A DNA stretch of 64,000 nucleotides, from the IMG/VR virus record IMGVR_UViG_3300032285_004054, positions 62,001-126,000 of that record; one strand, given 5' to 3'. Of the stretch, positions 11,412 to 44,396 are shown piece by piece (positions within the stretch are counted from its first letter, which is position 1; each line of letters starts with the position of its first letter). Under the pieces are notes generated by a model that saw only the letters and a program-made list of their open reading frames with translations, did no database searches and had not been told where the DNA came from. The translations under genes and the position numbers were made by a program.

Positions 11412-11882
11412 ATGTCTTGTACTGCTATTTCAAATATACCTGCAACAGAATGTATAGGTAATTCGTTAGCTACTATTAACGGTAATTTTACTTCGTTACA
11501 TACAGATGTTTGTAGTAAAGTGGACCGCGCAGGCGATACTTTAACGGGGCCTTTAAACTTTGATGGTCAACAAATACAACGATTTTCCGCTAATGTTATT
11601 ACAAAAGCATCAGATTTTATACTTGATGCAACTCATAACGGAGCAATAATTTTAGTTGATAGTGGTGCTACTGTAACTGTTACATTCCCTCAAGGTGTTT
11701 TATCTGTTGGTTTTAATTTAGTTTTAATACAGATGGGAGTAGGTACAATAAAAATGGGTACAACAGGCTCTGCAGCAATTATTAACGTAAATAATGCTCT
11801 AGCTACACGTAAGCAATACGCTCAATTAAACTTAGCAGTAGTCCGTGCGGATGTAGCTTGGATATCTGGTGATATTGTCTAA
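11412..11882 (+). CDS. Short fibre protein, 'CIGxSL..IN.NF' anchor family
   Basis: ECIGNSLATINGNFTSL anchor, KVDRAGDTLTG fibre motif, C-terminal beta domain ending WISGDI; TATAAATA at 11392-11399. Confidence 0.6.
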   Translation: MSCTAISNIPATECIGNSLATINGNFTSLHTDVCSKVDRAGDTLTGPLNFDGQQIQRFSANVITKASDFILDATHNGAIILVDSGATVTVTFPQGVLSVGFNLVLIQMGVGTIKMGTTGSAAIINVNNALATRKQYAQLNLAVVRADVAWISGDIV

Positions 11883-11884
11883 TT

Positions 11885-12997
11885 ATGTTTGGGGTATATA
11901 CTTTAAGAGCGACATCAAACAATACGTTTGTAATGCCTGACCCTCTTAATAAGTTTACCTTACAAGGGGAAGGAGGGTATCAATCATACGCATACACTTT
12001 TGTTGATAGAGGTACTTGCTATTTTAGTGCCCAAGAAAAAAACGGATATATTAGTGATATAATTAGTAACCAAAATCTAATAAAAACTTTAACACTTGGT
12101 TCGTATACCTATTATTATGTTGAAAACATATTAAAAATTGCCTCTGGTAATGCAAATAAAGTAATGATATATCAAGACGGTAGTATTGATATCGGGGGTA
12201 AGAGAACAAAATTTCCTTGGATAGCAGATAATCTATATAATTTTGCAGATATTTTTTGTCCGTCGAATTACGCTGCGTATTATACACAGTTTTTTCTTAT
12301 GAAGACTGGTGAATTATATGAAGTTAATTGTAATACGAAAACAAAAACTTTATTATTATCAGATGTTAATAATATTTTATGTAGAAACCCTTCACATGCT
12401 TGTGATATCTTAGTAGCAAAAAATAACGGTGAAGTCTGGCATGCTTGGCTTAAAAATAGTGGTGGTAATAGAAACAGCGGGCAAGCATCAGGTGTTTGTC
12501 AGGTTGTAGGGCTGAACGTACAGGATATCTATTTTTCAACTATAGCAGATAATCCTTGGGGGGCTTTTATCTGTTATAGTAGTGATAAAAGAAAACTTTA
12601 CAGATTAACAACAGATAGTGTAGGTCGTCATACAAGTGTAGATCCTACACCGTATATAACACTCACCGATCCAGACGAACATTACTTACATGGTCAAGGT
12701 AATGAATTTCATACTGTAGTTATTACTAATAAAAAACTATATGATTATCATGATAGAGGATGGAATGCAGATTACTACGACGTACATACGTATGATTTTC
12801 TAAATGGTGTACAGATATCTACACCTACTGCTTATTCTATGATGATTGAAGCAACAGACGGTTACTACTTTATGGATCAAACTGGAGCAGAACAGCAAAA
12901 TGTTACTGAGAGAGAAAAATACGGCTTAAACGCACCTATTAAATATGATTTCTATAACACTTTAGTAACTTATTTGAAGGCAAAACGAACTCTTTAA
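11885..12997 (+). CDS. Hypothetical beta-repeat (RCC1-like) protein
   Basis: FFLMKTGELY, ILVAKNNGEVW and GNEFHTVVIT blade-like motifs. Confidence 0.4.
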   Translation: MFGVYTLRATSNNTFVMPDPLNKFTLQGEGGYQSYAYTFVDRGTCYFSAQEKNGYISDIISNQNLIKTLTLGSYTYYYVENILKIASGNANKVMIYQDGSIDIGGKRTKFPWIADNLYNFADIFCPSNYAAYYTQFFLMKTGELYEVNCNTKTKTLLLSDVNNILCRNPSHACDILVAKNNGEVWHAWLKNSGGNRNSGQASGVCQVVGLNVQDIYFSTIADNPWGAFICYSSDKRKLYRLTTDSVGRHTSVDPTPYITLTDPDEHYLHGQGNEFHTVVITNKKLYDYHDRGWNADYYDVHTYDFLNGVQISTPTAYSMMIEATDGYYFMDQTGAEQQNVTEREKYGLNAPIKYDFYNTLVTYLKAKRTL

Positions 12998-13014
12998 TAT
13001 AAATAATCTTATAT

Positions 13015-13971
13015 ATGTCTTGTGACGGAACAACATACACATCTCAAATACCCGAAACCGACTGCATAGGTGATTCGTTAACTACTATTAATAGTAATTT
13101 CAGTGCACTAGACGTTAGCGTATGTTCATTAAGTGCTGCGATCGGTAGTATTGCAGGAATTGACATTGATAATGTTTATGATGCAACACCAATCGGTACT
13201 GTCGTTTATTTTGCTGCTTCTGCTGCTCCTGTCGGTTGGTTTGAGTGTTACGGACAATCTTTAGATAAAACACTTTATAAACCACTCTTTGATGTTATCG
13301 GTTATACATATGGTGGTTCTGGAAACAATTTTAATCTTCCTGATTTAAGAGGTCAATTCGTAAGAGGCTGGGACCATGGAGCTGGTGTTGATAGTGGAAG
13401 AGCTTTTGGTAGTTCGCAAGATGATGCGTTTAAATCTCACGCTCACGGATTTTCGCTTCCAGATGGAACCGTTGGTGGTGGTGACGCTTATGCAAGCACA
13501 TATACTAGAATAAACGATTACGGTAGAACAACAGGCGCTGAAGGTGATACCGAGACTCGCCCCAAAAACGTAGCACTTCTTCCTTGTATCAAATACGCTC
13601 AAGTTCAAGCGTTAACACAAGTTGGCTTAAGTGCTCAAAATGTTTTAAATGTAGTTAATAATTTAAGCCCAGGGGTTGCTAAAGCTTGGGTGAATTTTGA
13701 CGGTACAACAGGTGTGTATAGAGGTACACCATATAACGTTTCAGGCATTACAAAAAACGGGTCCGGAGACTGGACAGTACATTTTGCAAATAATTTAGCT
13801 GATGCAAATTATACCGTAACAGCTCAATGGGGCAACGCGACTCATACAAGTGATACCGGTATATATGTTAGTTTGGGATCTTTATCAGCTAGTGGATTTG
13901 AAATATTTTCTCAAACTTCTGGTTCTATGTATAACCCTGCAGTTTTTTGTATACAGGTTTTTGGTAGTTAA
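13015..13971 (+). CDS. Tail fibre protein with tail-collar domain, anchor family
   Basis: DCIGDSLTTINSNFSALD anchor; PIGTVVYFAASAAPVGWFEC...FNLPDLRGQFVRGWD collar; ETRPKNVALLPCIK; C-terminal AKAWVNFDG domain. Confidence 0.85.
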   Translation: MSCDGTTYTSQIPETDCIGDSLTTINSNFSALDVSVCSLSAAIGSIAGIDIDNVYDATPIGTVVYFAASAAPVGWFECYGQSLDKTLYKPLFDVIGYTYGGSGNNFNLPDLRGQFVRGWDHGAGVDSGRAFGSSQDDAFKSHAHGFSLPDGTVGGGDAYASTYTRINDYGRTTGAEGDTETRPKNVALLPCIKYAQVQALTQVGLSAQNVLNVVNNLSPGVAKAWVNFDGTTGVYRGTPYNVSGITKNGSGDWTVHFANNLADANYTVTAQWGNATHTSDTGIYVSLGSLSASGFEIFSQTSGSMYNPAVFCIQVFGS

Positions 13972-13979
13972 TTAATGTT

Positions 13980-14399
13980 ATGTCATTTATATTATATCCA
14001 CAAGTTAATAAACAATTAGCAGTAGTAACACCTACAGGCATTCTTTCTATTGAAGAAGTTATTGTACAAACTGTTCCTCCTGATACATCCTATAAAGTTG
14101 TTGATACACTTAATGTTGATCATTACTTTTTTGATGCTTACGAATATGACGAAGAACTAGGAGCTGTAGTTAATTTTGAAAAAGCTAAAGAAATACAGCG
14201 TAATAGATGGAGAGCTGCTAGAACACCGCTTCTACAACAACTCGATATAGAATTTCAAAGAGCACAAGAGTCAGGTGAAACAGCAGCGTTACAGCGTGTT
14301 GTAGCTAAGAAAATAGCACTAAGAGGTGTTACTGACACGCCACTACCTGATGATCTTGAAGGTATAAAAAATACCTGGCCTGACGTATTAAATAGTTAA
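13980..14399 (+). CDS. Putative tail fibre assembly protein
   Basis: RAARTPLLQQLDIEFQRAQE...KIALRGVT chaperone-type motif, directly after a fibre gene. Confidence 0.65.
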   Translation: MSFILYPQVNKQLAVVTPTGILSIEEVIVQTVPPDTSYKVVDTLNVDHYFFDAYEYDEELGAVVNFEKAKEIQRNRWRAARTPLLQQLDIEFQRAQESGETAALQRVVAKKIALRGVTDTPLPDDLEGIKNTWPDVLNS

Positions 14400-14434
14400 A
14401 ATTCTAACAAATTAGCATAAATATAAATACATAT

Positions 14435-15163
14435 ATGAGCAATCCTCTATCGGACATCTACTCCAAAATCCTTTTAAACGAAACCGAATCCAATGTCGTA
14501 GTACCTGCTGGCAAATTAGAAATCGCCAAGGGAGGTAAAGAACCTCTTATCAAGGACGGCGGAGATGAGAAGGCCAAGAAGAACCTCAACAAGCCTGAAG
14601 AAGGCAAGGTTGAGGATGGCGAACTCGAGGAACTTAAAGATTCTATGAACACCCCAACAACAAAGAGCGCCTTCGAAGGTACGTTCGAAAAGCTCTTCAA
14701 AGCCACGCTCACAGAAGACGTAGCCGAAGACGCTGCTTCCGCTGTTGAGCCTGAAGTACCAACAACCCCTGAAGATTCTCACGAAGAGATCGAAGACACT
14801 CATGATGAGGTCGGTGATCTTGCTAGTGATCTTCGCGATATCATTGACAAGCTAGAAGCAATTCTTGACAAGGTCGGTGGTGTTGATCACACAGAAGGTG
14901 AACACGATGAAGACATGGAAACCGAACTCGGTGAAGCCGTTTCTGAGCCTGAATTAAAGCCTCTCGGTGATAAGACAGCCTCTTTAAAGAGCACCAAGAA
15001 GTTCACAACTTCCAATGTCAAGCCTCATGGTGGTAAGGCCTCTCATGGAGATATCTCCGAAGAGCCTGAACTCAAGCCTCTCGCTGACAAGTCTGCTGCT
15101 CTAAGAAGCACAAAGAAGTTTGCTGCTAACTCCTCCGTTAAGGTTGGCGATTTCTTCAAATAA
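14435..15163 (+). CDS. Acidic, probably abundant head-internal/scaffold-like protein
   Basis: E/D-rich; C/G-ending codon bias like gp22/gp23; several L/I-x-E protease-type sites; duplicated EPELKPL.DK.A.L.STKKF; tandem late promoters at 14418-14429; strong terminator. Confidence 0.5.
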   Translation: MSNPLSDIYSKILLNETESNVVVPAGKLEIAKGGKEPLIKDGGDEKAKKNLNKPEEGKVEDGELEELKDSMNTPTTKSAFEGTFEKLFKATLTEDVAEDAASAVEPEVPTTPEDSHEEIEDTHDEVGDLASDLRDIIDKLEAILDKVGGVDHTEGEHDEDMETELGEAVSEPELKPLGDKTASLKSTKKFTTSNVKPHGGKASHGDISEEPELKPLADKSAALRSTKKFAANSSVKVGDFFK

Positions 15164-15185
15164 GACTTAATAAAAGTTAAAATAG

Positions 15186-15215
15186 AAATAGCTCCTAGAA
15201 ATAGGAGCTATTTTT
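15186..15215 (+). terminator. Rho-independent terminator
   Basis: 12 bp stem AAATAGCTCCTA, GAAA loop, TAGGAGCTATTT, then T run. Confidence 0.9.
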
Positions 15216-15242
15216 GTATACCTAAACGGCATAAATACTATT

Positions 15243-15830
15243 ATGAATTTGTTCGAAAACTCTTATAAAGACGGCTATTTAAAATACCATAACAATTATA
15301 TTGTGCCTAATAGTTTAGATCCTAGAACATTCTATTATCCTCCTGAAGGCGGAGACCCTGTATTACACCCTGAAATTAAATTACAAGTATTAACAGATAT
15401 CGCTAGATTCAATACTCTTGAGGGAGACTTTGGGACAACAAGAGTTAAAGAGTATTATCTAATAGGACCTATACTTAAACCCGGTGCTTCTGATCGCTGT
15501 CCTATTTTTATTAAAGTACAGCTTGAAGAGAATAATCTAACAGATGTACTAAAAGAAAAGATTTTAAATTGTATGAAGGATATTGACGGTAGATTAGCTA
15601 CCGGTACCCAACATCCTGTTATGTATATACCGACAGTTAGACCTTTAAACCCAGATGATTATGATTCTGCCTATCACCCTTATACAGATAAATGGGTTAA
15701 GAAAGTTAGATCATTAGGTGAAGGTGTTAGCTCACTTGAAGGGTTAGCAAAAGACCCTGCTAAAAAGAAAAAGAAGCACGCTTTAGTTCGTGGTCAATTA
15801 CGTAAACATCTACATCAAACTAAACACTAA
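15243..15830 (+). CDS. Degenerate nucleotidyltransferase-fold protein
   Basis: LHPEIKLQVL, YLIG, GTQHPVMY and AYHPYTDKWVK resemble phage Pol-beta-type NTases, but GS/DxD is absent (LIGPILKPGASDRCPIFIKV). Confidence 0.4.
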   Translation: MNLFENSYKDGYLKYHNNYIVPNSLDPRTFYYPPEGGDPVLHPEIKLQVLTDIARFNTLEGDFGTTRVKEYYLIGPILKPGASDRCPIFIKVQLEENNLTDVLKEKILNCMKDIDGRLATGTQHPVMYIPTVRPLNPDDYDSAYHPYTDKWVKKVRSLGEGVSSLEGLAKDPAKKKKKHALVRGQLRKHLHQTKH

Positions 15831-16507
15831 TGAACAAAGTTCGTTATTTAAATAAAAGTCTTAACGCCAACGAAAGAGAAAATTACTCTAAATGGTGGAA
15901 AGAGCAGATTGAACACTACGGTGTTTCTACGACCTACTATACAAACGGTTTTGGTTTAACCTCCCAAGATTTAATTTACGGAGAAGATCCTACATCAACA
16001 TATCTTAGTTCTGGACCTGTAATTATGGTTACAGATATTACTAACGATTCTATTTTATTATCTAAGTTTGGTATTATGGCTGATTGTGATATGACAGCCG
16101 TTATACATATATCTTCTTTCTATGAAACGTTTGGTTTCGGGGCTGAACCTAAATCTGGTGATCTTATTGAATTAAAAGAATACGGAGGTTTTGGTGATAG
16201 ACCAGGCGGGAGAGGAGCTCCTATCTATCAAATAACCGAGCGTGATGATCAATACTTACCTTTAACTAATCACCTTATGGGTCATTATGTTTGGTATATC
16301 AAGTGCAAGCGCTTCGAGTACTCATCAGAGCCTGGCGTTCACGCTGAACCTGTTAATACCCAACCTGATGATAGTGGCGGATATGGCAGATTACCAGAAG
16401 GTGTTAACCCTGCCGAGCTTACAGTATCAGAACCTGATAGCGCTGATGCTGAAGCCGGAAAGATATTTGAGTATGGTGATCTTAGTAACCCTTACGGTAA
16501 CTATTAA
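15830..16507 (+). CDS. gp14: Neck protein (T4 gp14-like)
   Basis: IYGEDPTS, LSKFGIMADCDMT, EPKSGDLI and CKRFEYSSE motifs. Confidence 0.8.
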   Translation: MNKVRYLNKSLNANERENYSKWWKEQIEHYGVSTTYYTNGFGLTSQDLIYGEDPTSTYLSSGPVIMVTDITNDSILLSKFGIMADCDMTAVIHISSFYETFGFGAEPKSGDLIELKEYGGFGDRPGGRGAPIYQITERDDQYLPLTNHLMGHYVWYIKCKRFEYSSEPGVHAEPVNTQPDDSGGYGRLPEGVNPAELTVSEPDSADAEAGKIFEYGDLSNPYGNY

Positions 16508-16797
16508 TCAACTTTATCTGCAAGCGCAGCAATATAGTTTACTAGATCAATAGCTGTATCTTTACGATACCCGCCTGCAAACCGTGAATACTTTTGATCG
16601 ATAAAGGTAGCAAGCGCTATCACTTTACACACGTCATCAGTAATTTCAGCATTTTGATATTGCTTCAATAATGACTTTGTAAGATGCCAACAGCCATCCT
16701 TGCCCCAGGTATCAGCGTATTGATCGCCTCGTTCTTGCATTGTCTTTGCAACCTCTTTAAGAGTATTGGTTGCAGAAGAAATAAATTCGTTAGCCAT
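16504..16797 (-). CDS. Small all-helical nucleotide-modification-associated (DUF6378/Nmad1-like) protein
   Basis: ERGDQY...KYSR...DTAIDLVNY pattern. Confidence 0.5.
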   Translation of the reverse strand: MANEFISSATNTLKEVAKTMQERGDQYADTWGKDGCWHLTKSLLKQYQNAEITDDVCKVIALATFIDQKYSRFAGGYRKDTAIDLVNYIAALADKVD

Positions 16798-17066
16798 TAT
16801 CGGTTACCGAGCCAGTCGATAGTATTAGCGGATGTTACTTCAGTAATGTCAAAATATAGACTATGAGTGGTGCCTCCTGCCTCCACTGCGTAAGCTTTAA
16901 TCTTACGTGGAGTCTTAGAATAAGGTACTACTCTGTCTAAAGTAGATTCACTTACAATGTTGTAATTAGTACCGAACTCAGCTGCAATAGCTGCATTTAA
17001 GAACTGATTAATATCAGTACCTTGTACTTGATGTGGCTTTACTTGAAAGATAGTAGGTGTAGTCAT
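16797..17066 (-). CDS. Hypothetical protein
   Basis: 89 aa ORF; TAAATA (minus strand) at 17072-17077; TAATG coupling to the next gene. Confidence 0.7.
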   Translation of the reverse strand: MTTPTIFQVKPHQVQGTDINQFLNAAIAAEFGTNYNIVSESTLDRVVPYSKTPRKIKAYAVEAGGTTHSLYFDITEVTSANTIDWLGNR

Positions 17067-17074
17067 GATTCTAT

Positions 17075-17260
17075 TTAGTTCTTCTTGTTTTTATTAGCAA
17101 CCTCTTTCTTTTCCTTCTTAATAAGACCGAGCATAGTATGCTTAAAGTCACGTGTTTCATTGTACCAGTTCTCAAGATCCTTACCTCCGAGACCCTTTGG
17201 AGGCTGTAGATTCCAGATCTTGCTTGTTTTTAACATTTGTTTAGATGGCCAGATATGCAT
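17075..17260 (-). CDS. Hypothetical small basic protein
   Basis: ORF track 17075..17302; ATG 17260 (MHIWPSK) is the more plausible start. Confidence 0.5.
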   Translation of the reverse strand: MHIWPSKQMLKTSKIWNLQPPKGLGGKDLENWYNETRDFKHTMLGLIKKEKKEVANKNKKN

Positions 17261-17304
17261 AAGATTAGAATTAGATATTAAAATAAAAGATAGATATATC
17301 AAGC

Positions 17305-17332
17305 TTGTTTTTTATTTTTTTGCAGGTATAAT
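17305..17332 (+). promoter_or_regulatory. Sigma70-like early promoter of rnh
   Basis: TTGTTT-N16-TATAAT, 6 nt before ATG 17339. Confidence 0.6.
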
Positions 17333-17338
17333 GCTTTT

Positions 17339-18238: not shown

Positions 18239-18583
18239 TTTCTTGAGGGAGTTACGTATAAGCTCTGCTTTATAAAGCTTCGAGGTAAACTCCTTTAAGA
18301 ATCGTGCTATCTCAAAAGAAGTACATACGTTAATAATTCTTGATTCTACGTAGAGAACTTTTGTTTCAGACCAGTCTGGGTATATGTAATGCACACATTC
18401 ATGAAACGCAGTTCTAACAAATTCTCTTCTAGGATCAAATTCTAGAATGTCGTTTTCGTAGTCGCATATACCTTGACTTCTACGCATCTTTTTAAACGTA
18501 AAGAACTCTGGAGGTTTACGTTTAACAAGCTTAAAGCATTGCTGATATACAACAGCTGTCTGTTTTTTTGTTAGCTTTTGCAT
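18212..18583 (-). CDS. Small HExxH zinc-metallopeptidase-like protein
   Basis: GICDY...TAFHECVHYIYPDWSE; TAAATA at 18595-18600. Confidence 0.55.
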   Translation of the reverse strand: MQKLTKKQTAVVYQQCFKLVKRKPPEFFTFKKMRRSQGICDYENDILEFDPRREFVRTAFHECVHYIYPDWSETKVLYVESRIINVCTSFEIARFLKEFTSKLYKAELIRNSLKKSKKRKKIN

Positions 18584-18641
18584 ATCTATACTAATATTTA
18601 TTTGTTTAACAGGTATAGAACGTATAAATAATAGATAATAT

Positions 18642-19390: not shown

Positions 19391-19402
19391 ATAGTAATTA
19401 TA

Positions 19403-19636: not shown

Positions 19637-19644
19637 ACAACACC

Positions 19645-19673: not shown

Positions 19674-19681
19674 GAAAAAAA

Positions 19682-26351: not shown

Positions 26352-26359
26352 TTTTTTAT

Positions 26360-26920
26360 TTATAAAATAGGTTTGGATATATCAAGTATGGTATTATAGA
26401 TAATATCTCTGGCTCGTTCAACGGTCATTTCACCAAAAAGTGTAGATCTTGGATGTATTCGTACTTCTGGAAACTCTGGTGGCTCGTAAGGAGAATCGAT
26501 ACCTGTAAAGTCTTTTATCTCCCCTGCACGTGCTTTTTTATACAAACCTTTAGGATCTCTTAACTCGCAAGTACGTAAAGGTGTATCCATATACACTTCA
26601 ATAAATCTAGCGCTAGCGTATTTCTCTAGCATATCTCGAGCTTCATCTCGCATTGATCGGAGAGGGGAAATCATAGCTACAATAACAAGATTAGCCTTTT
26701 GAAAAGTAAGCATATTTTTAGCACAATAAATAGCTTCAGATACCATTCTCTGTCTACTCTTCATATCAAAGCCTTTTGGTATATCATAACTAGCTCTCAA
26801 AGCATCACCATCAATAAGACCTGTCCGGAATTGAAATATACACTTGTTATACAAAGCATTTGCAACGGTTGTTTTGCCAGCTCCAGATAAACCTGTAATC
26901 CAAACAACAGTAGGTTTCAT
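26360..26920 (-). CDS. cysC: Adenylyl-sulfate (APS) kinase
   Basis: WITGLSGAGKTT, DGDALR, ISP and RDPKGLYKKARAGEIKDFTGIDSPYEPP; start probably ATG 26920 (ATGA overlap). Confidence 0.93.
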   Translation of the reverse strand: MKPTVVWITGLSGAGKTTVANALYNKCIFQFRTGLIDGDALRASYDIPKGFDMKSRQRMVSEAIYCAKNMLTFQKANLVIVAMISPLRSMRDEARDMLEKYASARFIEVYMDTPLRTCELRDPKGLYKKARAGEIKDFTGIDSPYEPPEFPEVRIHPRSTLFGEMTVERARDIIYNTILDISKPIL

Positions 26921-37021: not shown

Positions 37022-37046
37022 GTTAGTTACTTAATTTTGTTATCAA

Positions 37047-39419
37047 TTATTCTCCAAGGAATTGTTTACGTGCATTCATTTTTTGTTGGTACTGAGCAGC
37101 GGTTGCTTTATCGAATGTTGCAGGTTCTTGGCTAGCGCTACCTGCTGGTTGAGGGGCTTGTGCGCTACTATTACCTAAGAACTGATCAGCTGCTGCATTT
37201 GACGATGCAGTACTATTACCTAAGAACTCATCTGTAGCAGGATTTGTTGGTGTTGGTGTACTATTACTGTTACCTAAGAATTGTTCTGCTGCCGCACTAG
37301 AAGGTGTACTACTATTTCCTAAGAACTGATCTGCTCCTGCACTTGACGGTGCACTACTGTTACCGAGGAACTGATCTGCTCCTGCACTCGAAGGAGCGCT
37401 CTCATTACCTAAAAATTGATCTGCGGATTGTGTACTCGGTGTAGGGGTAGTATCAGCATTATCATCATTGTAAATGCCTGAACTTGTTGCACTTGCTCCT
37501 GTACCTAACGATTCTTCAGTGTCAGCATATGTTATAGGTGATTCTTCACCCGCTAAATCATTAGCAGCAGATGTGGGTTCGGGTTGAGCTACATCCATAC
37601 TACCGGGAGAAGCAAGATCTGTCATATTGAATGCAGCATCAGACATATTATTATAAATTCTTTCTTGATTGTTGAATGTTTCTTGACCGTTATCAGCCAT
37701 AGCTAACTCAACAGGTGATAATGTTGCAGCTTCAATCGGGCTTGTTACATTGCTGTAATCTAGATTGAAAGGTTTGTCTGCTGCAGCAGTTGCAGCTGCG
37801 GAAGCATCTCCGTATGTTTTTTGAGCATCAGCTGCATTACTCGGAGCATTTGCTGTAGATGTAGCAGGATCAAGTGAGTAAGGTGCTTTAGGTGCACCGA
37901 GACAGGGATCCTTAACAACCTGTCCACTTCTATCTGTGTTATAATTAGGACGACCAGGGGCAGATACGTTATTGTATTTGTAGCTAAAAGCCGGTGGAAC
38001 AGGAGGAGCAGTAGGTTTAAAAATAGAATTTAAAATTTGAAATTGACTACTAAAAGCGCCTATTATGCCTGCAAGTACACCACCTTTAATTTGGTCTAAA
38101 GCAGTAGTGAGACCATACCCCATATTGTAGTTATAACCGTATCCGGATATCTTATTAAGAATACATAGTATCGTACTAAACGGCGGTGGTAATGCGCTTA
38201 CCAAAGCTTCAGGATTATTTAAAAACGCCATTCCTTGTTGAACTTGCGGTGGTAGGAAACGAGCAGCTAATGCAGCAGGGTTGGAAATAATAGACCCTAG
38301 CTGTCCTGTAACATTTGTTAATTGGCTTGTAAATTGTGTTATTTGGTTTAAACCTCCAAATGCGCTTGCTATAGAACCTACACTACCTGCGATCTGGGTA
38401 ACAGCTTGTAAAAAGCCTAATACCATATTAAGAGGTATCAATTCATTTATAATCATGAATACAAATTTTTGTAACATGTAAAATAAATCATTAATAAATT
38501 TACCGATGCTTTTGATAATATTCATAGCACCTAGATACATGTCCTTAATAAACTGTACAGGTCCGAATAACTTACCTCCTGCCATAGCGCTTTGTAAGTG
38601 TTGAATACTACCGTATATATTACCTGGTAGATGGGATATCTCCTCCATCTTAATAGCTAGAAAAGAAGCTTCATGGGATTGAGCAAATTTTGGATTTACC
38701 TTGTTAATAACCCCGCCTATTGTAGGTATAATACCATGGGCACCTAAAGGATCTCTTAGCATACCAGTTAAACCGTATAAAGTTGAACCGATAAACTTAT
38801 TAACAGGTTTAAACTTGTCATGCATTATCTGTACTGCTTGACCAAGTGATGATGCAATACCTGCTTCAGCACCAGCTAACCCGTTAGCAATACTACCTAC
38901 TGCACAATTTATAGAATTATTAGCGGTATTAACAAATAGATTAGCGTATTGATTACGTACAATAGCGTGTACATCCTGGGTTAAAGCACCAGGTGCGGCT
39001 TGAATACCAGCACCGTTTAACATTGCATTTGATTGCATCAACGCAGCTTCCATACCGGAATTTGTTGCTTGTGCTTGATTTAGCATGTTAAATGCATTAT
39101 CAAAAAGACCTAAATGAGGTATAACTTTATCCTTTTTAGCAGGGTCTAGTATACCGGTTAACCAAGTATCAGGCCCGTTTAAGTAAGTAGTACCTTTACC
39201 GCTAGCAGATGATGGTGTACTACTTTCTCCTAAGAACTGATCTGCTCCAGCACTCGAAGGAGCGCTACTATTGCCAAGAAATTGGTTCGCTCCTGTACTT
39301 GATGGTGCGCTGCTATTGCCAAGAAATTGGTTTGCTCCAGCACTTGAAGCAGCGTTCCGAGCAGCAAGTTGATCAAACTGCGCTCTAGCAGCATCTCCAG
39401 TTAGTTTTTGTACAGACAT
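37047..39419 (-). CDS. Large helical protein with terminal QFLGN repeats (baseplate hub, tape-measure or ejection candidate)
   Basis: Ala/Gly amphipathic-helix core and low-complexity repeated ends; upstream of gp5; TAAATA at 39431-39436. Confidence 0.5.
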   Translation of the reverse strand: MSVQKLTGDAARAQFDQLAARNAASSAGANQFLGNSSAPSSTGANQFLGNSSAPSSAGADQFLGESSTPSSASGKGTTYLNGPDTWLTGILDPAKKDKVIPHLGLFDNAFNMLNQAQATNSGMEAALMQSNAMLNGAGIQAAPGALTQDVHAIVRNQYANLFVNTANNSINCAVGSIANGLAGAEAGIASSLGQAVQIMHDKFKPVNKFIGSTLYGLTGMLRDPLGAHGIIPTIGGVINKVNPKFAQSHEASFLAIKMEEISHLPGNIYGSIQHLQSAMAGGKLFGPVQFIKDMYLGAMNIIKSIGKFINDLFYMLQKFVFMIINELIPLNMVLGFLQAVTQIAGSVGSIASAFGGLNQITQFTSQLTNVTGQLGSIISNPAALAARFLPPQVQQGMAFLNNPEALVSALPPPFSTILCILNKISGYGYNYNMGYGLTTALDQIKGGVLAGIIGAFSSQFQILNSIFKPTAPPVPPAFSYKYNNVSAPGRPNYNTDRSGQVVKDPCLGAPKAPYSLDPATSTANAPSNAADAQKTYGDASAAATAAADKPFNLDYSNVTSPIEAATLSPVELAMADNGQETFNNQERIYNNMSDAAFNMTDLASPGSMDVAQPEPTSAANDLAGEESPITYADTEESLGTGASATSSGIYNDDNADTTPTPSTQSADQFLGNESAPSSAGADQFLGNSSAPSSAGADQFLGNSSTPSSAAAEQFLGNSNSTPTPTNPATDEFLGNSTASSNAAADQFLGNSSAQAPQPAGSASQEPATFDKATAAQYQQKMNARKQFLGE
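37160..37427 (-). repeat. Six ~45 bp coding repeats (ADQFLGNSSAPSSAG)
   Basis: Visible in both DNA and translation. Confidence 0.9.
39204..39338 (-). repeat. Three 45 bp coding repeats (GANQFLGNSSAPSST)
   Basis: Visible in both DNA and translation. Confidence 0.9.
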
Positions 39420-39459
39420 TGGTTAATAAATATTTAACCGTTAATTTTAAAAATTAAAG

Positions 39460-39487
39460 TTGAATATATACTGTTCTAATATAAAAT
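39460..39487 (+). promoter_or_regulatory. Sigma70-like promoter of the glycosyltransferase-sulfotransferase operon
   Basis: TTGAAT-N16-TAAAAT, 6 nt before GTG 39494. Confidence 0.55.
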
Positions 39488-39493
39488 TAATAC

Positions 39494-40426
39494 GTGAACG
39501 AATATGAATATATTATACTACATATTGATGGAGGTATGGGTAAAAACGTTGCTGCAACTGCTGTTGCGCATGCAATTAAAAAACAACATTTTGTAAGTAA
39601 GTTAATTATTGTTACAGCATGGCCTGAAGTATGGATACATAATCCAGACGTACATAGGGTTTATAAGTTTGGTACTTTGCTATATTTTTACGAGGATTAC
39701 ATTAAGGATAAAAAGACTAAAATAATGCGTCTTGAGCCTTATCATTCTGAAGATCTTCTTCTAAAGAGAAAGCATCTTGCAGAGGTTTGGTGTGATCTTT
39801 ATGATATTCCCTGTGATAGCGTACAGCCTAGAATTTATCTAAGTAACAGGGAATTAATGGCTGCAAACGCTCTGGTTAAAAAGCAAGGACCTATACTTGT
39901 TGTTCAGTCCTCAGGTGGTGCAGATGGTCAAGGATACCCCTATTCATGGGCTAGAGACCTACCACCTCAGGTAGCTCAAGAAACCGTAAATCTTGTTAAA
40001 TCACAATTTAGTAAGGTATATCAAATAAGACGAGATAATCAGATTGTAATCGATGGTACGGAACAATTAACAGGTAATCTTCGAGACATTATTAGTGTTA
40101 TTGCATTATCTGATAAGTTTTTAGGTATTGATTCACTTATGCAGCATGCTTGTGCTGCTCTTAATAAGCCTGCTACCGTAGGATGGATTGCTAATTCGCC
40201 AACTGTGTTTGGTTATAAGTTGCATAATAATATAATTGCAAAAGGTAGTACTGAGTTTAAGCATTACGTTGAATCGTATTTAGAAGAGTATGACTGGGTA
40301 GGTAGTCGATTCCATGAATGTCCTTATACTGATGTAAATAGTATTTTTGATATTAAAGAATTAGCTAATTCTTTGCTTGAACCTGGTACAAAGTTAGTAG
40401 ATAATAATGGTCTGCTTTTAAACTAA
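39494..40426 (+). CDS. Glycosyltransferase, GT9 (heptosyltransferase)-like
   Basis: IDGGMGKNVAAT, NPDV and FLGIDSLMQHACAAL GT9 motifs. Confidence 0.75.
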   Translation: MNEYEYIILHIDGGMGKNVAATAVAHAIKKQHFVSKLIIVTAWPEVWIHNPDVHRVYKFGTLLYFYEDYIKDKKTKIMRLEPYHSEDLLLKRKHLAEVWCDLYDIPCDSVQPRIYLSNRELMAANALVKKQGPILVVQSSGGADGQGYPYSWARDLPPQVAQETVNLVKSQFSKVYQIRRDNQIVIDGTEQLTGNLRDIISVIALSDKFLGIDSLMQHACAALNKPATVGWIANSPTVFGYKLHNNIIAKGSTEFKHYVESYLEEYDWVGSRFHECPYTDVNSIFDIKELANSLLEPGTKLVDNNGLLLN

Positions 40427-41250
40427 TGAAAAATATATTCTTTAATTCATCAATGCCTAGAAGTTGTTCTACCCTTCTTCAGTGCATTTTTAATCAGCAT
40501 CCGGAGATTCAAGCTACACAAACCGACCCTGTACTTGAATATCTTTATGGTGCTAGGATGAATTATACGAGTACACCAGAGGTTAAAGCTATGGATAAAG
40601 ATCTAGCTTTGAATACCTGGCGTGGGTTCTGTTGGGGTGGTCTTCAAGGATATGCTGATGCTTATACCGATAAACCTAATCTTTGTATTAAGACGAGAGG
40701 CGCTTCAATTCATTATTCTTGGTTTAATGCTTTTATGCCCTATCAGCCTAAAATGATCTGTATGGTAAGAGACCTTAAAGGTATAATTGCTTCTATGGAA
40801 AAGCTCTATAGAGCAAATCAAGAACATCATCAGGAGATACAAAATCATAGAGATATGAAAGGTACATCTACAGCAAAGAGAGTAGATGCTTGGTTTGCCT
40901 CCCCACCTGTTGGTTTAGCATTAGAACGTTTACAGCAATGCGTACACGAAGGTATTAATAAGAATATACTTTATGTACGAGCAGAAGATCTTTCTTCTAA
41001 TCCTTCCGAGCAAATGGAACGAATTTATAGTTATCTTGATCTACCTAATTTCGAACACGACTTTAAAAACGTCGAGCAGTCTATTAAGGAAGATGACTCT
41101 GTTTATGGTTTAACAGATACTCTTCACACAATACGCAGAGAGGTAAAAGCACTTAAGGATGATTCAAGGGAGATCCTGGGAGAACCAGTTTGTACTTGGA
41201 TTGATAATACCTTTCAATGGTACCAGAAAGGCTTTGGATACCTTAAATAA
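40426..41250 (+). CDS. PAPS-dependent sulfotransferase
   Basis: 5'-PSB SMPRSCSTLL, 3'-PB MVRD...IIAS, VRAEDL..NP; TAATG-coupled to the GT. Confidence 0.85.
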   Translation: MKNIFFNSSMPRSCSTLLQCIFNQHPEIQATQTDPVLEYLYGARMNYTSTPEVKAMDKDLALNTWRGFCWGGLQGYADAYTDKPNLCIKTRGASIHYSWFNAFMPYQPKMICMVRDLKGIIASMEKLYRANQEHHQEIQNHRDMKGTSTAKRVDAWFASPPVGLALERLQQCVHEGINKNILYVRAEDLSSNPSEQMERIYSYLDLPNFEHDFKNVEQSIKEDDSVYGLTDTLHTIRREVKALKDDSREILGEPVCTWIDNTFQWYQKGFGYLK

Positions 41251-41350
41251 AACGCTTTATATAAGCTGTTACTTTCTGTAGGAAAGTTTTCTTTTTACTG
41301 GCTGTTTGTACATGAACAGTTCTGTACTTTCTTTGACTATAATTAGCCAT
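41243..41350 (-). CDS. Possible 35 aa basic peptide
   Basis: MANYSQRKYRTVHVQTASKKKTFLQKVTAYIKRFI begins 1 nt after the upstream stop. Confidence 0.4.
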   Translation of the reverse strand: MANYSQRKYRTVHVQTASKKKTFLQKVTAYIKRFI

Positions 41351-41351
41351 A

Positions 41352-42113
41352 TTAACCTACTTTCCAGAGTTTTATCCAAACACGCTTATCGAGTGTGGTT
41401 GTGCTATTGTTTATTTGGTTGCCGTACTGATCACCAGATTTAATAAAGACATATCCTGCGGGGTCTGCAAAATCTTGACCTACCATTCTCAAAGTCAATG
41501 ACGCCTGAGTATTGAATGTTACTACGCCCTTCATTGAACAGGTTCCTGAATTAAAAGTTGAACCGGCTACAGTACCGTCTTGATTACCTATCAACGTACT
41601 ACCATTATAAAGTAATAATTTTGCATCGTAGTTGTGTAATGATCCGGTCTCCGCACCTGCTTCATAAGAATAAGTACCTGGATCAACAGTTATTGTGCTA
41701 TTAACGGGGTCATATCCTATACCTTGCGTATCAACAATTTTTGTTGTACAGCTTAGAGTGGTTACTGTGTTACGGATGTTTTGAGGTGCTGCGTTCAGTG
41801 CAGTAACCCAGCCGTACTCAAGATAAGGATAATTTCCAATGTTTTGCATATCGCTTGTTAATTTTCGTACTAAAGAGTATAAATTACTTATATCACCTCC
41901 AATATAATCAGCAGATAATTTAGCTACATTTGCAGTTTGTGATAATGTTAAATTAATTGTAGGTGAATCAATAACCTGTAACGTAAAAGGGTGTGTCGAT
42001 AAATTACAAACAGCTACGTCTAAATTATTAAAGTTAGCATTAATAACCGGTAATGTATCACCTATACATTGATTACCTGAAATGGCAGTTGTTAAATTAC
42101 AAAGCGTTGACAT
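41352..42113 (-). CDS. Anchor-family fibre/decoration protein
   Basis: QCIGDTLPVINANFNNLD anchor; C-terminal beta-sandwich (ITVDPGTY); TAAATA at 42123-42128. Confidence 0.6.
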   Translation of the reverse strand: MSTLCNLTTAISGNQCIGDTLPVINANFNNLDVAVCNLSTHPFTLQVIDSPTINLTLSQTANVAKLSADYIGGDISNLYSLVRKLTSDMQNIGNYPYLEYGWVTALNAAPQNIRNTVTTLSCTTKIVDTQGIGYDPVNSTITVDPGTYSYEAGAETGSLHNYDAKLLLYNGSTLIGNQDGTVAGSTFNSGTCSMKGVVTFNTQASLTLRMVGQDFADPAGYVFIKSGDQYGNQINNSTTTLDKRVWIKLWKVG

Positions 42114-42128
42114 ATTGTTTATTATTTA

Positions 42129-42917
42129 TTAGGAGGGTGGAGTGTAGTCCTGTATTTTTTGTATATTAATAAAAGCAAAATATAAATTAGGGGTTGTCTT
42201 AGTTAAAACGCTACTCATACCGTTTGCTGAAGCATGGGAGAATGTATAACCTAACCCGGTGTAAAGACTCGCATCTTTATTATTAACAACAGTTTTTATG
42301 TATTGTTTAATACGTATTTTCGTTTCTGTCGGAAACACTAACCTACCATGCATTTTTGAATACGTCGTTGTAGTAGGATAATAAGCTGTGTCAGAATACT
42401 CAGCGGTACCATATAATAATACATCATCGGTTACTGCATTAACTAAATTAGAAATATGAGTATCTGTATAGTATGCTGATACTTCACTATCTACTCTATA
42501 GATACCTGCTGGTACAGTTACAATACCCGTGGACGGGTCGAGTGTATAAAAACCGTTATTACCTGTTGTGAGAGTACCGTCTGCTTTACAATTATAATCG
42601 GCAGCATTAAGCTGTCTATATATAAGATTCGTGGTAGGTCTAAGAGGGTTTGATCCTGTAGGTGGGTATATGTTAGCAAACGATATACCATAATCACTAG
42701 CTAACGCAGATCGATTTTCAACAAATCTTGCTGAAAAGTATACACTATGATCAAGACTAGTAATACCAATAGCGCGTGAACCAAACGCACTACTTAATGT
42801 ATCTAAAAACGTTAATATATTACATAATTCTCCGCTTATGTTTCCAAAATTATTAAAAATTTTTGAATAAGAATCTCCTATATATTCAGTAGCTGAAATA
42901 GTTTGTATAGTTGTCAT
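42129..42917 (-). CDS. Anchor-family fibre/decoration protein
   Basis: EYIGDSYSKIFNNF anchor; IVTVPAGIY...YGTAEY...GRLVF...NIQKI. Confidence 0.6.
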   Translation of the reverse strand: MTTIQTISATEYIGDSYSKIFNNFGNISGELCNILTFLDTLSSAFGSRAIGITSLDHSVYFSARFVENRSALASDYGISFANIYPPTGSNPLRPTTNLIYRQLNAADYNCKADGTLTTGNNGFYTLDPSTGIVTVPAGIYRVDSEVSAYYTDTHISNLVNAVTDDVLLYGTAEYSDTAYYPTTTTYSKMHGRLVFPTETKIRIKQYIKTVVNNKDASLYTGLGYTFSHASANGMSSVLTKTTPNLYFAFINIQKIQDYTPPS

Positions 42918-42918
42918 A

Positions 42919-43620
42919 TTATATACTCTTAATTTTTTGTATACCTAAATACGCGAGATAAAATTTATCAAAATTAGTTGGAGGTGTTGTGTTAGGTGAA
43001 ACACCTACATATCCTTTTTGCGCAAAATAATGCTTAATAAATACAGTTGTGTCTTGGTTAAATACAACTCTACCTCTTATTTTAACATTATTGGATGAAC
43101 CGAATGAATCACCTGTTGAAGAATACTCAGATGAACCATATAAAAGTGGTAAAGGTGTTGTGATAGATGCAGTTGTATACATTATATTTGCAGTATGAGC
43201 AAAACAATAATACCCTGAACATCCTGCATTAATATCGTAAATACCTTTAGGTATAAAGATTTTACTGTTATTAAGTTTGTAATATGAAGTATTATTATTT
43301 GTAGTTGCTTGACCGTTTATATCTACATTGTAATTTACAGTATTAAGATTTCTTATAATAGGATTAGTACCATATAAAGTATCAATCGCGAGACTACTTT
43401 GGGAAATAGTAGCCGGGTATGTCTCTGTAAAAAAAGCTCCATAAGGACCGCAGTTATCAATGCTTGTAATACCGACTATACGGGTACTGAATGCAGCACT
43501 TAATGCAGCAGCAGCTGTTTCGAGAAATTGAAGACTACTATAAAGATTATTAAAATTACCATTAATAATCGGTAGCGTATCCCCTATATACTGTTGCGGG
43601 TTAATATTAGTAACACTCAT
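42919..43620 (-). CDS. Anchor-family fibre/decoration protein
   Basis: QYIGDTLPIINGNFNNL anchor; IFIPKGIY...YGSSEY...GRVVF...GIQKI. Confidence 0.6.
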   Translation of the reverse strand: MSVTNINPQQYIGDTLPIINGNFNNLYSSLQFLETAAAALSAAFSTRIVGITSIDNCGPYGAFFTETYPATISQSSLAIDTLYGTNPIIRNLNTVNYNVDINGQATTNNNTSYYKLNNSKIFIPKGIYDINAGCSGYYCFAHTANIMYTTASITTPLPLLYGSSEYSSTGDSFGSSNNVKIRGRVVFNQDTTVFIKHYFAQKGYVGVSPNTTPPTNFDKFYLAYLGIQKIKSI

Positions 43621-44396
43621 ACGTCTTTAATTTTTTGTATGTTGAAAAAAGCATAATACATTAACGGTATATCATCTGTAAATCCTGGTAGAGAGTTATT
43701 AATATTATCTCTTGTATATGATGTACCTGCTGTAAAACATCTACCTTTTGCAGCTAGATTAACACCTGCATTAATATAATGTACTATATGCATATCAGTG
43801 TAATCTGTAAATTTTACTCTACCTCTCATTTTACACCAAATAGGTGCCCATTCTCCTGTGTGCCTTGGTAATACACCTTGCTCAGTATATTCTGATGAAC
43901 CTTGTAATATAACATCATCAGGTGAATTTTGTACACGGTTATAAACAAGATTTGCACAATGGGATTCTGTTCTCATTGCAGAAGCTTCTGCATCGATATC
44001 ATAAATACCTGGAGGCACTGTTATAACACCTGTAGTTGTATTAAGCTTATAATATCCTTGTGAAGCGTCACCTGTAAGTATTTGATTACCGTCTGTATCG
44101 CAGTTATAATCAACATGATTTAAAATGCGGTTGTTTGTTGCACCTCCTGTTAAACCTAACTTTGAATTATCAAATGGGTCGTAAGCTTCTGTAAAACGCG
44201 CATAATATAATATACTTTTATCGATACTTACTAAACCGGGTGTAAATGCTCCAAAATCTCTTTGAAGTTTATTAAACATATCTTGAGCTAGTGCAATACC
44301 AGCATCCAATGCTGAAAAATTATTGTTAAGTGTTGTTAGAGAATCACCTAAACATGTTCTAATATCAAAGGTGTTAACAAAATTACAATCAATCAT
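43617..44396 (-). CDS. Anchor-family fibre/decoration protein
   Basis: TCLGDSLTTLNNNFSALD anchor; VITVPPGIY...QGSSEY...GRVKF...NIQKI; TATAAATA at 44404-44411. Confidence 0.6.
   Translation of the reverse strand: MIDCNFVNTFDIRTCLGDSLTTLNNNFSALDAGIALAQDMFNKLQRDFGAFTPGLVSIDKSILYYARFTEAYDPFDNSKLGLTGGATNNRILNHVDYNCDTDGNQILTGDASQGYYKLNTTTGVITVPPGIYDIDAEASAMRTESHCANLVYNRVQNSPDDVILQGSSEYTEQGVLPRHTGEWAPIWCKMRGRVKFTDYTDMHIVHYINAGVNLAAKGRCFTAGTSYTRDNINNSLPGFTDDIPLMYYAFFNIQKIKDV

What the first reader, a model, noticed from the sequence alone, without database searches (positions are those of the whole stretch)
11412..44396. Six paralogues share an N-terminal 'CIGDSL..IN.NF..L' anchor with interchangeable heads
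Seen: the ORFs at 11412, 13015, 41352, 42129, 42919 and 43617 all begin I...[EDQT][CY][IL]G[DN][ST]L..IN.NF..L, often with a second Cys, and then diverge. Heads are a tail-collar fibre, a small beta domain and four beta-sandwich domains. Known: similar GD.L...IN.NF.L segments start trimeric T4-like baseplate and fibre proteins. Inference: a common docking module lets many different appendages bind equivalent virion sites, giving a modular display system.
Basis: partly seen in the sequence, partly recalled or inferred. Interest (0 to 1): 0.65.

Follow-up and report, generated by a model that had tools for sequence, protein, structure and literature searches.

The report
Shared N-terminal knob on phage fibres
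An uncultured 218-kb T4-like phage encodes seven short trimeric fibre proteins that all begin with the same roughly 36-residue cysteine-bearing coiled-coil module, and this undescribed module heads hundreds of different fibre proteins in one clade of large uncultured phages, most likely as their common attachment end.

Summary
Six ORFs at the stated coordinates start with [CY][IL]G[DN][ST]x3[IL][NF]xNF (6 hits in six frames, 0 in shuffles). A seventh copy lies just outside the window.

A profile of the module finds 870 protein clusters in 1.84 billion, almost always at residues ~3-48. These carry at least 45 unrelated C-terminal parts, including tail Collar, C1q/TNF jelly-roll, pectate-lyase-like, RCC1 propeller and CBM.

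All 30 IMG/VR records tested carry 2-9 copies. The five compared have major capsid proteins 78-83% identical to this one, so they form one clade of ~215-kb phages. Cellular genomes lack the module.

A homotrimer model puts the conserved I/L/I/F/L residues on heptad core positions. Two flanking cysteines co-occur strongly, as expected if a folded-back N-terminal arm is stapled to the helix.

The genes sit behind T4-type late promoters. They cluster after the capsid gene and before the neck genes.

The likeness to T4 gp9/gp10 is only a short motif. PF07880 and profile searches fail to link them.

Docking to equivalent virion sites is plausible but untested. Verdict: a new domain family of a known kind, the conserved N-terminal end of modular phage receptor-binding fibres.

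The parts
11412..11882 (+). P0001, 156 aa: module (residues ~1-37, three Cys) followed by a GDTLTGPL motif and a small all-beta tip
   Evidence: ESM-Atlas neighbours Phage_phiTE_241_C, PTL_trimer, Mtd_N, DUF2793
13015..13971 (+). P0002, 318 aa: module (three Cys), tail Collar domain (residues 61-116), and a C-terminal tail-fibre tip domain (about 208-318)
41352..42113 (-). P0003, 253 aa: module (three Cys) plus a diverged C1q/TNF-like head; has its own late promoter
42129..42917 (-). P0004, 262 aa: module with Tyr in place of Cys2 and with Cys3 only; C1q/TNF-like head; starts 1 nt after the P0005 stop
42919..43620 (-). P0005, 233 aa: module without cysteines (Tyr at Cys2); C1q/TNF-like head; start overlaps the P0006 stop (ATGA); modelled as a homotrimer
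43617..44396 (-). P0006, 259 aa: module with Cys1 and Cys2 only; helix 16-49, then a C1q/TNF jelly-roll head; first gene of the P0006-P0005-P0004 unit
11392..11399 (+). TATAAATA late-promoter-like element 12 nt before the P0001 start
12998..13005 (+). TATAAATA late-promoter-like element 9 nt before the P0002 start
44404..44411 (-). TATAAATA late-promoter-like element 7 nt before the P0006 start
42123..42129 (-). ATAAATA element 9 nt before the P0003 start, overlapping the P0004 stop
44415..44448 (-). Terminator-like hairpin (GAGCCAAC / GTTGGCTC) plus a T-run, separating the capsid-gene transcript from the fibre operon
   Evidence: read from the sequence
44476..44829 (-). Conserved small ORF (117 aa) that always lies between the capsid gene and the fibre array in relatives; function unknown; listed as context

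Best explanation
The six proteins, plus a seventh outside the window, are late-expressed, short, trimeric virion fibres. Each has a shared N-terminal module of about 36 residues and a different receptor-binding-type head.

The module consensus is M-S-x-C-N-F-T-x-x-I-x-x-x-E-C-I-G-D-S-L-x-x-I-N-x-N-F-x-N-L-D-T-x-x-C. I read it as an extended N-terminal arm followed by the first three heptads of a parallel triple coiled coil. The arm folds back along the helix and is stapled by Cys1 and Cys3. Together these form a compact trimeric knob.

This knob is the constant, virion-proximal end of the fibre. It sets the trimer register. Through its invariant surface residues (G-D-S, N-x-N) and the near-invariant Cys2, it plugs the fibre into the particle, most likely at the baseplate periphery or the neck.

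The variable heads engage host surface structures. They include Collar, C1q/TNF jelly-roll and a small beta tip here, and pectate-lyase-like, RCC1 propeller and CBM domains in relatives.

Shown: the motif, its family-wide spread, the head diversity, the multi-copy state, the late-promoter context and the cysteine co-occurrence. Predicted: the trimer and the coiled coil. Inferred: the arm staple, docking, and the site.
For: Motif and copies.

Family spread: 870 cluster representatives at E<=1e-3 and 53 at E<=1e-10, with the match at residues ~3-48 in nearly all of the 150 listed, in proteins of 46-1551 aa. Among 139 of these there are at least 45 head clusters not linked by BLAST. Pfam heads in 35 representatives include Collar, RCC1, pectate-lyase-like and CBM_4_9.

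Copy number and clade: every one of 30 IMG/VR records holds 2-9 copies, and one complete 217-kb genome holds 9. The same clade is shown by capsid protein identity of 78-83% and neck gp14 identity of 63-73%. Only one hit was found in 185,579 species genomes.

Trimer: the P0005 homotrimer scored ipSAE 0.90 against a best control of 0.00. That mark was reached by 21 of 30 proteins solved as pairs and 0 of 23 solved as single chains; the calibration used two copies, so the counts hold only roughly. The runs agree in at least 94% of contacts, and the partner pLDDT is at least 84. Interface residues 12, 16, 19, 23, 26, 30, 33, 37, 40, 44, 47 and 51 follow a 3-4 heptad spacing. The monomer model shows helix 16-49.

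Conservation: I(-5) 99%, Cys2 93%, G 95%, D 84%, S 96%, N 98%, N 99%, F 94%, L 94%. D, S and the second N are absent from the predicted trimer interface.

Cysteines: Cys1 and Cys3 are both present in 103 proteins, both absent in 36, and mixed in 12 (Fisher 2e-22, not corrected for relatedness). The pairing is kept in internal repeats that have lost Cys2. By my arithmetic, the 11-residue arm and the 20 helical residues are each about 30 A long.

Late genes: ATAAATA occurs 82 times in the genome. Of these, 46 lie 4-21 nt before gene starts, against 1.3 expected. They precede P0001, P0002, P0003, P0006 and the 7th copy, and also the protease and scaffold genes. A gp55 late-sigma homologue is present.

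Position: copies lie right after the capsid gene, and right before gp13/gp14, where T4 has gp9-gp12 and wac.

Heads: they match tips of known tail fibres, namely the cyanophage A-1(L) short tail fibre CBD 8ke9, the S-RIP1 tail fibre and the CampHawk tail fibre.

Precedent: multi-RBP phages assemble fibres through conserved N-terminal domains (PMC10253068, PMC6872550).
Against: There is no direct evidence that any of these proteins is in the virion, and no partner or site was identified.

The module also occurs two or three times inside single chains in some relatives. So it is a general structural unit and not only a terminal plug.

The trimer model was made without an alignment, and TNF-like heads trimerise readily in models. 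It may therefore say little about the module itself.

Cytoplasmic assembly is reducing, so a disulfide would have to form after release.

The cysteine statistics ignore phylogenetic relatedness.

The three C1q/TNF-like paralogues are each conserved as separate orthologue groups. That argues for fixed, non-equivalent roles and not free interchange.
Confidence: 0.6

Rival explanations
1. The module is only a trimerisation and register-setting nucleus (a foldon-like cap) for coiled-coil fibres. Attachment to the virion is made by other parts or other proteins.
For: Core heptad positions carry the conserved hydrophobic residues. The module can sit internally and in tandem within one chain, where it cannot be a terminal plug. 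PDB profile searches pick up only trimeric coiled coils, such as coronavirus HR1 and P22 gp26, at non-significant E-values.
Against: The most conserved residues include positions outside the predicted trimer interface: D, S and N at 84-99%. Conservation also extends into the non-helical arm, with I(-5) at 99%. That is more than a register signal needs. In 144 of the 150 listed hits the module is at the extreme N-terminus, the end by which known phage fibres attach.
Confidence: 0.2
2. The module is a strongly diverged homologue of the N-terminal coiled-coil domain of T4 gp9/gp10. The fibres would then dock on a gp7-like wedge protein as gp9 and gp10 do.
For: T4 gp9 and gp10 start with GD.L..GG.KIN..F..[IL]Y. 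The best phage hit in the PDB is a gp10 with KINNNFDDLYSEL (E 0.29). hhalign gives 39% probability to T4 gp10. P0001 and P0002 lie just upstream of gp13/gp14, as gp9-gp12 do in T4. The gp9 N-terminal domain binds gp7, and gp9 and gp10 share their N-terminal ~200 residues (PMC3004832).
Against: PF07880 finds nothing in the genome at E<=10. The module profile finds nothing in T4 or P-HM2. The spacing differs by four residues. gp9 and gp10 lack the cysteines. The shared stretch is 14-17 columns of a low-complexity coiled-coil start. No gp6, gp7 or gp8 homologue was recognisable.
Confidence: 0.2
3. The fibres, or at least the four C1q/TNF-like ones, decorate the capsid. They would dock as trimers on local threefold sites of the T4-like shell, possibly through the conserved small ORF next to the capsid gene. 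This would give many equivalent sites.
For: The array lies directly after the capsid gene and a conserved 117-131-aa ORF in the window and in several relatives. A trimeric plug suits threefold capsid sites.
Against: In relatives the same array continues into Collar-domain proteins. Family heads include pectate-lyase-like and other tailspike-type domains. Other copies sit by the neck and tail-fibre genes. The small ORF gave no informative fold.
Confidence: 0.15
4. P0006, P0005 and P0004 form one 1:1:1 heterotrimer, as C1q A/B/C chains do. It would be held by an inter-chain Cys1(P0006)-Cys3(P0004) link. They would not be three separate homotrimeric fibres.
For: The three are conserved as separate orthologue groups in the same order in relatives. 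They are translationally coupled behind one promoter. Seven of the 12 exceptions to Cys1/Cys3 co-occurrence are exactly these proteins: the P0006 type has Cys1 only, the P0004 type has Cys3 only, and the P0005 type has neither.
Against: P0005 alone models as a confident homotrimer. Another three-gene array after the capsid gene (L093) shows no such cysteine complementarity.
Confidence: 0.15

Closest known systems
Conserved N-terminal anchor/assembly domains of multi-RBP phages (CBA120 TSP1-4, Klebsiella phages RaK2/phiK64-1, KP32-type anchor-branch systems; PMC10253068, PMC6872550, PMC11721090)
   Same: Several receptor-binding proteins in one genome share an N-terminal part and differ in their C-terminal heads. 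They are trimeric, and their heads are of tailspike or tail-fibre type.
   Different: There is no sequence relation. The module here is much smaller (~36 residues against 100-300). It carries a cysteine triad, is sometimes repeated inside one chain, and is confined to one uncultured clade of ~215-kb T4-like phages. No XD/gp10-like branching domains were detected.
T4 gp9 and gp10 N-terminal coiled-coil domain (Pfam PF07880 T4_gp9_10_N; PMC3004832)
   Same: An extended N-terminal segment followed by a triple coiled coil that begins with GD.L...IN.[ND]F..[LI]. Two different baseplate trimers share it. The gene position just upstream of gp13/gp14 is similar.
   Different: The spacing is four residues shorter. 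There are cysteines, and no gp9-type middle domain. There is no profile-level similarity.
C1q/TNF-headed fibres (BclA / F-BclA 9h38, collagen-like viral fibres, cyanophage A-1(L) short tail fibre tip 8ke9)
   Same: P0003-P0006 have a stalk plus a C-terminal C1q/TNF jelly-roll trimer.
   Different: The stalk is a short coiled coil with the special N-terminal module, not collagen. TM-scores are moderate (0.37-0.41 by query, 0.6-0.7 by target).
T4 gp12 / tail Collar domain proteins (PF07484)
   Same: P0002 carries a Collar domain at 70.9 bits and lies where gp12 and wac lie relative to the neck genes.
   Different: P0002 is much shorter (318 aa against 527 aa). Its N-terminus is the module, not the gp12 N-terminal part.

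Membership tests
Pfam PF07880 T4_gp9_10_N | Match to the family profile above its cut-off (25 bits) | tested here: not met
   There was no PF07880 hit for P0001-P0006 even at E<=1. No match was found anywhere in the 218-kb genome at E<=10.
Pfam PF07880 T4_gp9_10_N | N-terminal motif GD.L..GG.KIN..F..[IL]Y with T4 spacing | tested here: not met
   T4 gp9 and gp10 were read. The window motif has GD-to-IN four residues closer. The module profile finds nothing in the T4 genome. hhalign gives 39% and 6% probability.
Pfam PF07880 T4_gp9_10_N | N-terminal parallel triple coiled coil | tested here: met
   This rests on prediction only. The P0005 homotrimer scored ipSAE 0.90 against a best control of 0.00, with the caveats given. 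The contacts follow heptad spacing.
Pfam PF07880 T4_gp9_10_N | Binds a gp7-type wedge protein | not testable with these tools
   No gp7 homologue was recognised.
Modular phage receptor-binding fibres with a shared N-terminal anchor (functional class) | Several proteins of one genome share the N-terminus and differ in the C-terminal part | tested here: met
   There are seven copies in this genome and 2-9 in each of 30 related records. At least 45 head clusters were found.
Modular phage receptor-binding fibres with a shared N-terminal anchor (functional class) | C-terminal parts are receptor-binding or depolymerase-type domains | tested here: met
   The heads include Collar, C1q/TNF like known tail-fibre tips, and pectate-lyase-like, CBM and RCC1 domains in relatives.
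Modular phage receptor-binding fibres with a shared N-terminal anchor (functional class) | The N-terminal part physically attaches the protein to the virion or to another fibre | not testable with these tools
   Only indirect support exists: late promoters, gene position, and conserved surface residues.
C1q/TNF jelly-roll head | Fold match of the head to solved C1q/TNF trimers | tested here: met
   Foldseek against the PDB gave EDA-A1, 4-1BBL, Caprin-2 C1q and F-BclA at E 6e-5 to 5e-4, with target TM 0.6-0.72. BFVD gave C1q and collagen-like fibres at E down to 5e-10. The model pLDDT is 72.
Phage Tail Collar domain PF07484 | Profile match above the cut-off (24 bits) | tested here: met
   P0002 residues 61-116 score 70.9 bits at E 8.6e-20.

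The most novel reading that the evidence does not exclude
The module is a disulfide-stapled (Cys1-Cys3) trimeric knob that is covalently or tightly plugged through Cys2 into repeated sites on the particle. The three coupled C1q/TNF-like genes would make a C1q-style A/B/C heterotrimer, whose chains are told apart by complementary cysteines. The phage would then display a programmable mosaic of at least seven different heads. Such a plug-and-socket display system has not been described for T4-like phages.
Probability: 0.15. Interest if true: 0.7.

Novelty: new member of a known kind. Interest (0 to 1): 0.45.

Why it matters
Host range in large phages is set by the number and kinds of receptor-binding proteins they mount. 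This work defines a compact ~36-residue sequence tag that marks fibre genes in an entire uncultured clade of ~215-kb T4-like phages: 870 protein clusters, all currently labelled 'hypothetical'.

The tag gives a simple way to list the receptor-binding repertoire of these phages in metagenomes, and to watch head swapping. If the docking role holds, it also gives a very small natural adaptor for mounting foreign heads on such particles.

The cysteine triad and the occasional internal repeats are structural features that known anchor domains do not show.

The general principle, a conserved N-terminus with variable heads, is already well established. The finding therefore extends that picture and does not change it.

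Tried and rejected
- Pfam and PHROG scans of the six proteins: no family covers the N-terminus.
- PDB profile searches with 6 and 36 N-termini: nothing significant, only coiled coils and a gp10 at E 0.29.
- tblastn of a 48-aa canonical module against 50,697 cultured phage records: no match at E<=1. Sensitivity is low for so short a query.
- Megablast of the array against cultured phages: no match.
Closer sets were then used.
- Word search for relatives of P0001: only itself.
- Single-sequence AlphaFold model of P0001: pLDDT 42, unusable and not searched.
- ESM-Atlas look-up of the small ORF beside the capsid gene: uninformative, pLDDT 0.48.
- phmmer of the 485-, 824- and 1173-aa neighbours against the PDB: nothing. 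Baseplate_J is not detectable in the genome, so no docking candidate could be named.
- Sequencing-run search: only the probable source sample and no RNA run.
- Literature search for the motif strings: no paper.
- Gene conversion as the cause of the shared N-termini: rejected, because DNA identity is 37-75% with synonymous differences.
- Chance: rejected.
- Cellular or prophage origin: rejected, because there is one hit on a 7.7-kb MAG contig among 185,579 species.


Full report
**Setting.** The window is bases 62,001-126,000 of a 218,400-bp IMG/VR virus record that CheckV rates complete.
- It is a distant T4-like myovirus. Its major capsid protein (window 44935-46404, minus strand) is only ~34% identical to cyanophage gp23.
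- A gp20 portal (Pfam Portal_T4, 1e-96) and a gp21-type protease are present.
- There are weak matches to a gp22-like scaffold and to a gp14 neck protein.
- A gp55 late-sigma homologue is present.
- No cultured phage is close at DNA level.

**Observation.**
- A regular expression for the motif hits these six N-termini and nothing else in the six-frame translation. There were no hits in 50 shuffles.
- A profile of the six N-termini scores them at E 1e-20 to 1e-23 in the whole genome. It also recovers a seventh member just outside the window (G000:C1:131481-132251, minus strand, 256 aa). That member's C-terminal part resembles P0003.
- DNA identity among the seven module-coding stretches is 37-75%, with many synonymous differences. 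The similarity is therefore old and maintained on the protein, not a product of recent gene conversion.

**The heads.**
- P0002 has a Pfam tail Collar domain (70.9 bits) and a C-terminal tail-fibre tip domain.
- An AlphaFold model of P0006, built on ten relatives (pLDDT 72), shows a disordered first 15 residues, one long helix (16-49) and a beta-sandwich.
- Foldseek places that sandwich among C1q/TNF jelly-rolls: EDA-A1, 4-1BBL, Caprin-2 C1q and F-BclA. It also matches tips of phage and giant-virus fibres: the cyanophage A-1(L) short tail fibre CBD, the S-RIP1 and CampHawk tail fibres, and collagen-like proteins.
- P0004 and P0005 are full-length paralogues of P0006. P0003 is a distant one (hhalign 97%).
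- P0001 has no close relatives, and my single-sequence model failed (pLDDT 42). The ESM-Atlas model of the same sequence resembles phage fibre tip families (Phage_phiTE_241_C, PTL_trimer, Mtd_N, DUF2793).

**The module is a large, unrecognised family.**
- A profile of 18 N-termini was built from this genome and two related contigs. It was searched against 1.84 billion cluster representatives. It found 870 proteins at E<=1e-3 and 53 at E<=1e-10.
- In nearly all of the 150 listed, the match is at residues ~3-48. Their lengths range from 46 to 1551 aa.
- The family consensus is sharper than the six window copies suggest: M-S-x-C-N-F-T-x-x-I-x3-E-C-I-G-D-S-L-x-x-I-N-x-N-F-x-N-L-D-T-x-x-C-x-L-S.
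- The C-terminal parts of 139 of these proteins fall into at least 45 groups not linked by BLAST.
- Pfam recognises Collar, RCC1 propeller, pectate-lyase-like, CBM_4_9 and other beta-propellers in a sample of 35. Most of the sample has no family.
- No Pfam or PHROG family covers the module. Every source name seen is 'hypothetical protein'. No paper in the library contains the motif strings.

**Who carries it.**
- A scan of IMG/VR gave 77 loci.
- All 30 records tested carry 2-9 module ORFs. CheckV completeness values imply they are pieces of ~215-kb genomes. One complete 217,182-bp genome with terminal repeats has nine copies.
- Five such records have capsid proteins 78-83% identical and gp14 63-73% identical to those of the window. 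This is one clade.
- Among 185,579 bacterial and archaeal species genomes there is a single hit, on a 7.7-kb MAG contig. The family is viral.
- The module profile finds nothing in T4 or in Prochlorococcus phage P-HM2.

**Structure of the module.**
- A homotrimer model of P0005 scored ipSAE 0.90 against a best control of 0.00.
  - That mark was reached by 21 of 30 proteins solved as pairs and 0 of 23 solved as single chains.
  - The calibration held two copies, so these counts apply only roughly.
  - The runs agree in at least 94% of contacts, and pLDDT is at least 84.
- Interface residues 12, 16, 19, 23, 26, 30, 33, 37, 40, 44, 47 and 51 follow the 3-4 spacing of a coiled coil. The conserved I, L, I, F and L of the motif are therefore core positions.
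- The first eight residues of each chain also touch neighbouring chains.
- The strongest conservation also falls on residues that are not in that interface: D (84%), S (96%) and the second N (99%). It also falls on I at -5 in the non-helical arm (99%). That is more than trimerisation alone would need.
- Cys2, just before I-G-D, is present in 93% of the proteins.
- Cys1 (11 residues upstream of Cys2) and Cys3 (20 residues downstream) are both present in 103 proteins, both absent in 36, and mixed in 12 (Fisher 2e-22, uncorrected for relatedness).
- By my arithmetic, an 11-residue extended arm and 20 helical residues are each about 30 A long. An arm folding back along the helix would bring Cys1 to Cys3. 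I infer a stapled arm-on-coiled-coil knob; this was not measured.
- Some relatives carry two or three modules in one chain, and the Cys1/Cys3 pair is kept even where Cys2 is lost. The module is therefore an autonomous structural unit.

**Expression context.**
- The heptamer ATAAATA, the core of the T4 late promoter, occurs 82 times in the genome. Of these, 46 lie 4-21 nt upstream of a gene start, against 1.3 expected.
- It precedes P0001, P0002, P0003, P0006 and the seventh copy. It also precedes the protease, scaffold and small-ORF genes.
- P0006, P0005 and P0004 form one translationally coupled unit, with an ATGA overlap and a 1-nt spacer. The unit sits behind one such element and is preceded by a terminator-like hairpin.

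**Gene position.**
- In the window and in relatives, module genes gather at two places.
  - One is directly after the capsid gene and a conserved 117-131-aa ORF.
  - The other is directly before an acidic protein, gp13 and gp14. That is where T4 has gp9-gp12 and wac.
- In two related contigs, one array after the capsid gene holds three C1q/TNF-like genes and two Collar-domain genes. All five carry the module.

**Relation to T4.**
T4 gp9 and gp10 begin with GD.L..GG.KIN..F..[IL]Y.
- Their N-terminal ~200 residues are related. The gp9 N-terminal domain binds gp7 (PMC3004832).
- Every test of homology was negative or inconclusive.
  - No PF07880 match in the six proteins or in the genome.
  - No profile hit in T4.
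  - hhalign 39% and 6% over 14-17 columns.
  - A different spacing, and no cysteines in gp9 or gp10.
- I treat it as 'works like, perhaps distantly related', not as a member of that family.

**Interpretation.**
- The best reading is that these are late, trimeric virion fibres with receptor-binding-type heads and a common virion-proximal knob. This is the known design of multi-RBP phages (PMC6872550, PMC10253068, PMC11721090), realised with a new, very small, cysteine-bearing domain.
- That the knob is the docking element is inferred from four things:
  - its N-terminal position;
  - its conserved surface;
  - precedent in multi-RBP phages;
  - the suggestion that conserved cysteines may tie T4 gp10 to gp7 (PMC3004832).
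- The attachment site (baseplate, neck or capsid) is open.
The module can be internal. And the three C1q/TNF-like paralogues are each conserved as separate orthologue groups.
- Those three paralogues have complementary cysteines. The P0006 type has Cys1 only, the P0004 type has Cys3 only, and the P0005 type has none. Together they account for 7 of the 12 exceptions to co-occurrence.
- That pattern, with the translational coupling, raises the possibility of a C1q-like A/B/C heterotrimer. I could not test this.

**Limits.**
- There are no virion, expression or structural data.
- The trimer is a model made without an alignment.
- The cysteine statistics ignore shared ancestry.
- Neighbouring large structural proteins are too diverged to name.
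- The only sequencing run that holds the locus is the probable source sample.

Noticed in passing
whole genome G000; in the window e.g. 121-128, 11392-11399, 12998-13005, 14422-14429, 18623-18630, 26357-26364(-), 44404-44411(-), 48311-48318(-): The T4 late-promoter core ATAAATA sits only 4-21 nt upstream of 46 of 241 gene starts, against 1.3 expected. This implies very short leaders without an obvious Shine-Dalgarno sequence. A gp55 homologue lies at G000:C1:169945-170202.
   Followed up: partly
G000:C1:50417-52792(+) and 60168-60593(-) (outside the window); L009:5913-7190, L011:4941-6437, L093:4979-5680, L096:2282-4096(-): A second conserved N-terminus (MAILTP.LTGGNGTPTYN.G.AETYSW.P...NRP.FA) heads proteins that follow the module arrays in relatives. 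It may be another shared fibre end.
   Followed up: partly
window 39494-41250 (+): A sulfotransferase (Pfam Sulfotransfer_3, 1e-11) and an unknown 310-aa ORF lie on the opposite strand, between the fibre array and baseplate-hub-like genes.
   Followed up: no
window 49171-49629 (-) and 50529-51953 (+): A TnsA-like endonuclease and an alginate-lyase-domain protein are embedded among the head and neck genes.
   Followed up: no
window 44476-44829 (-): A small ORF (117 aa) is always found between the capsid gene and the fibre array in relatives. No family or confident fold was found. It could be a decoration protein or an adaptor.
   Followed up: partly
proteins P0011, P0037, P0042, P0074, P0136, P0151 (metagenomic relatives): The module is repeated two or three times within one polypeptide, 60-190 residues apart, and the Cys1/Cys3 pair is kept in each repeat.
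   Followed up: partly
window 13980-14399 (+): A 139-aa ORF directly after the Collar-domain fibre gene matches only phrog_20196 (function unknown). Its position suggests a fibre assembly factor.
   Followed up: no
L008, L015 (IMGVR_UViG_3300037189_018651, 93,197 bp): A second IMG/VR record carries P0006 and the P0002 N-terminus at 100% identity. It is probably the same virus assembled again.
   Followed up: no
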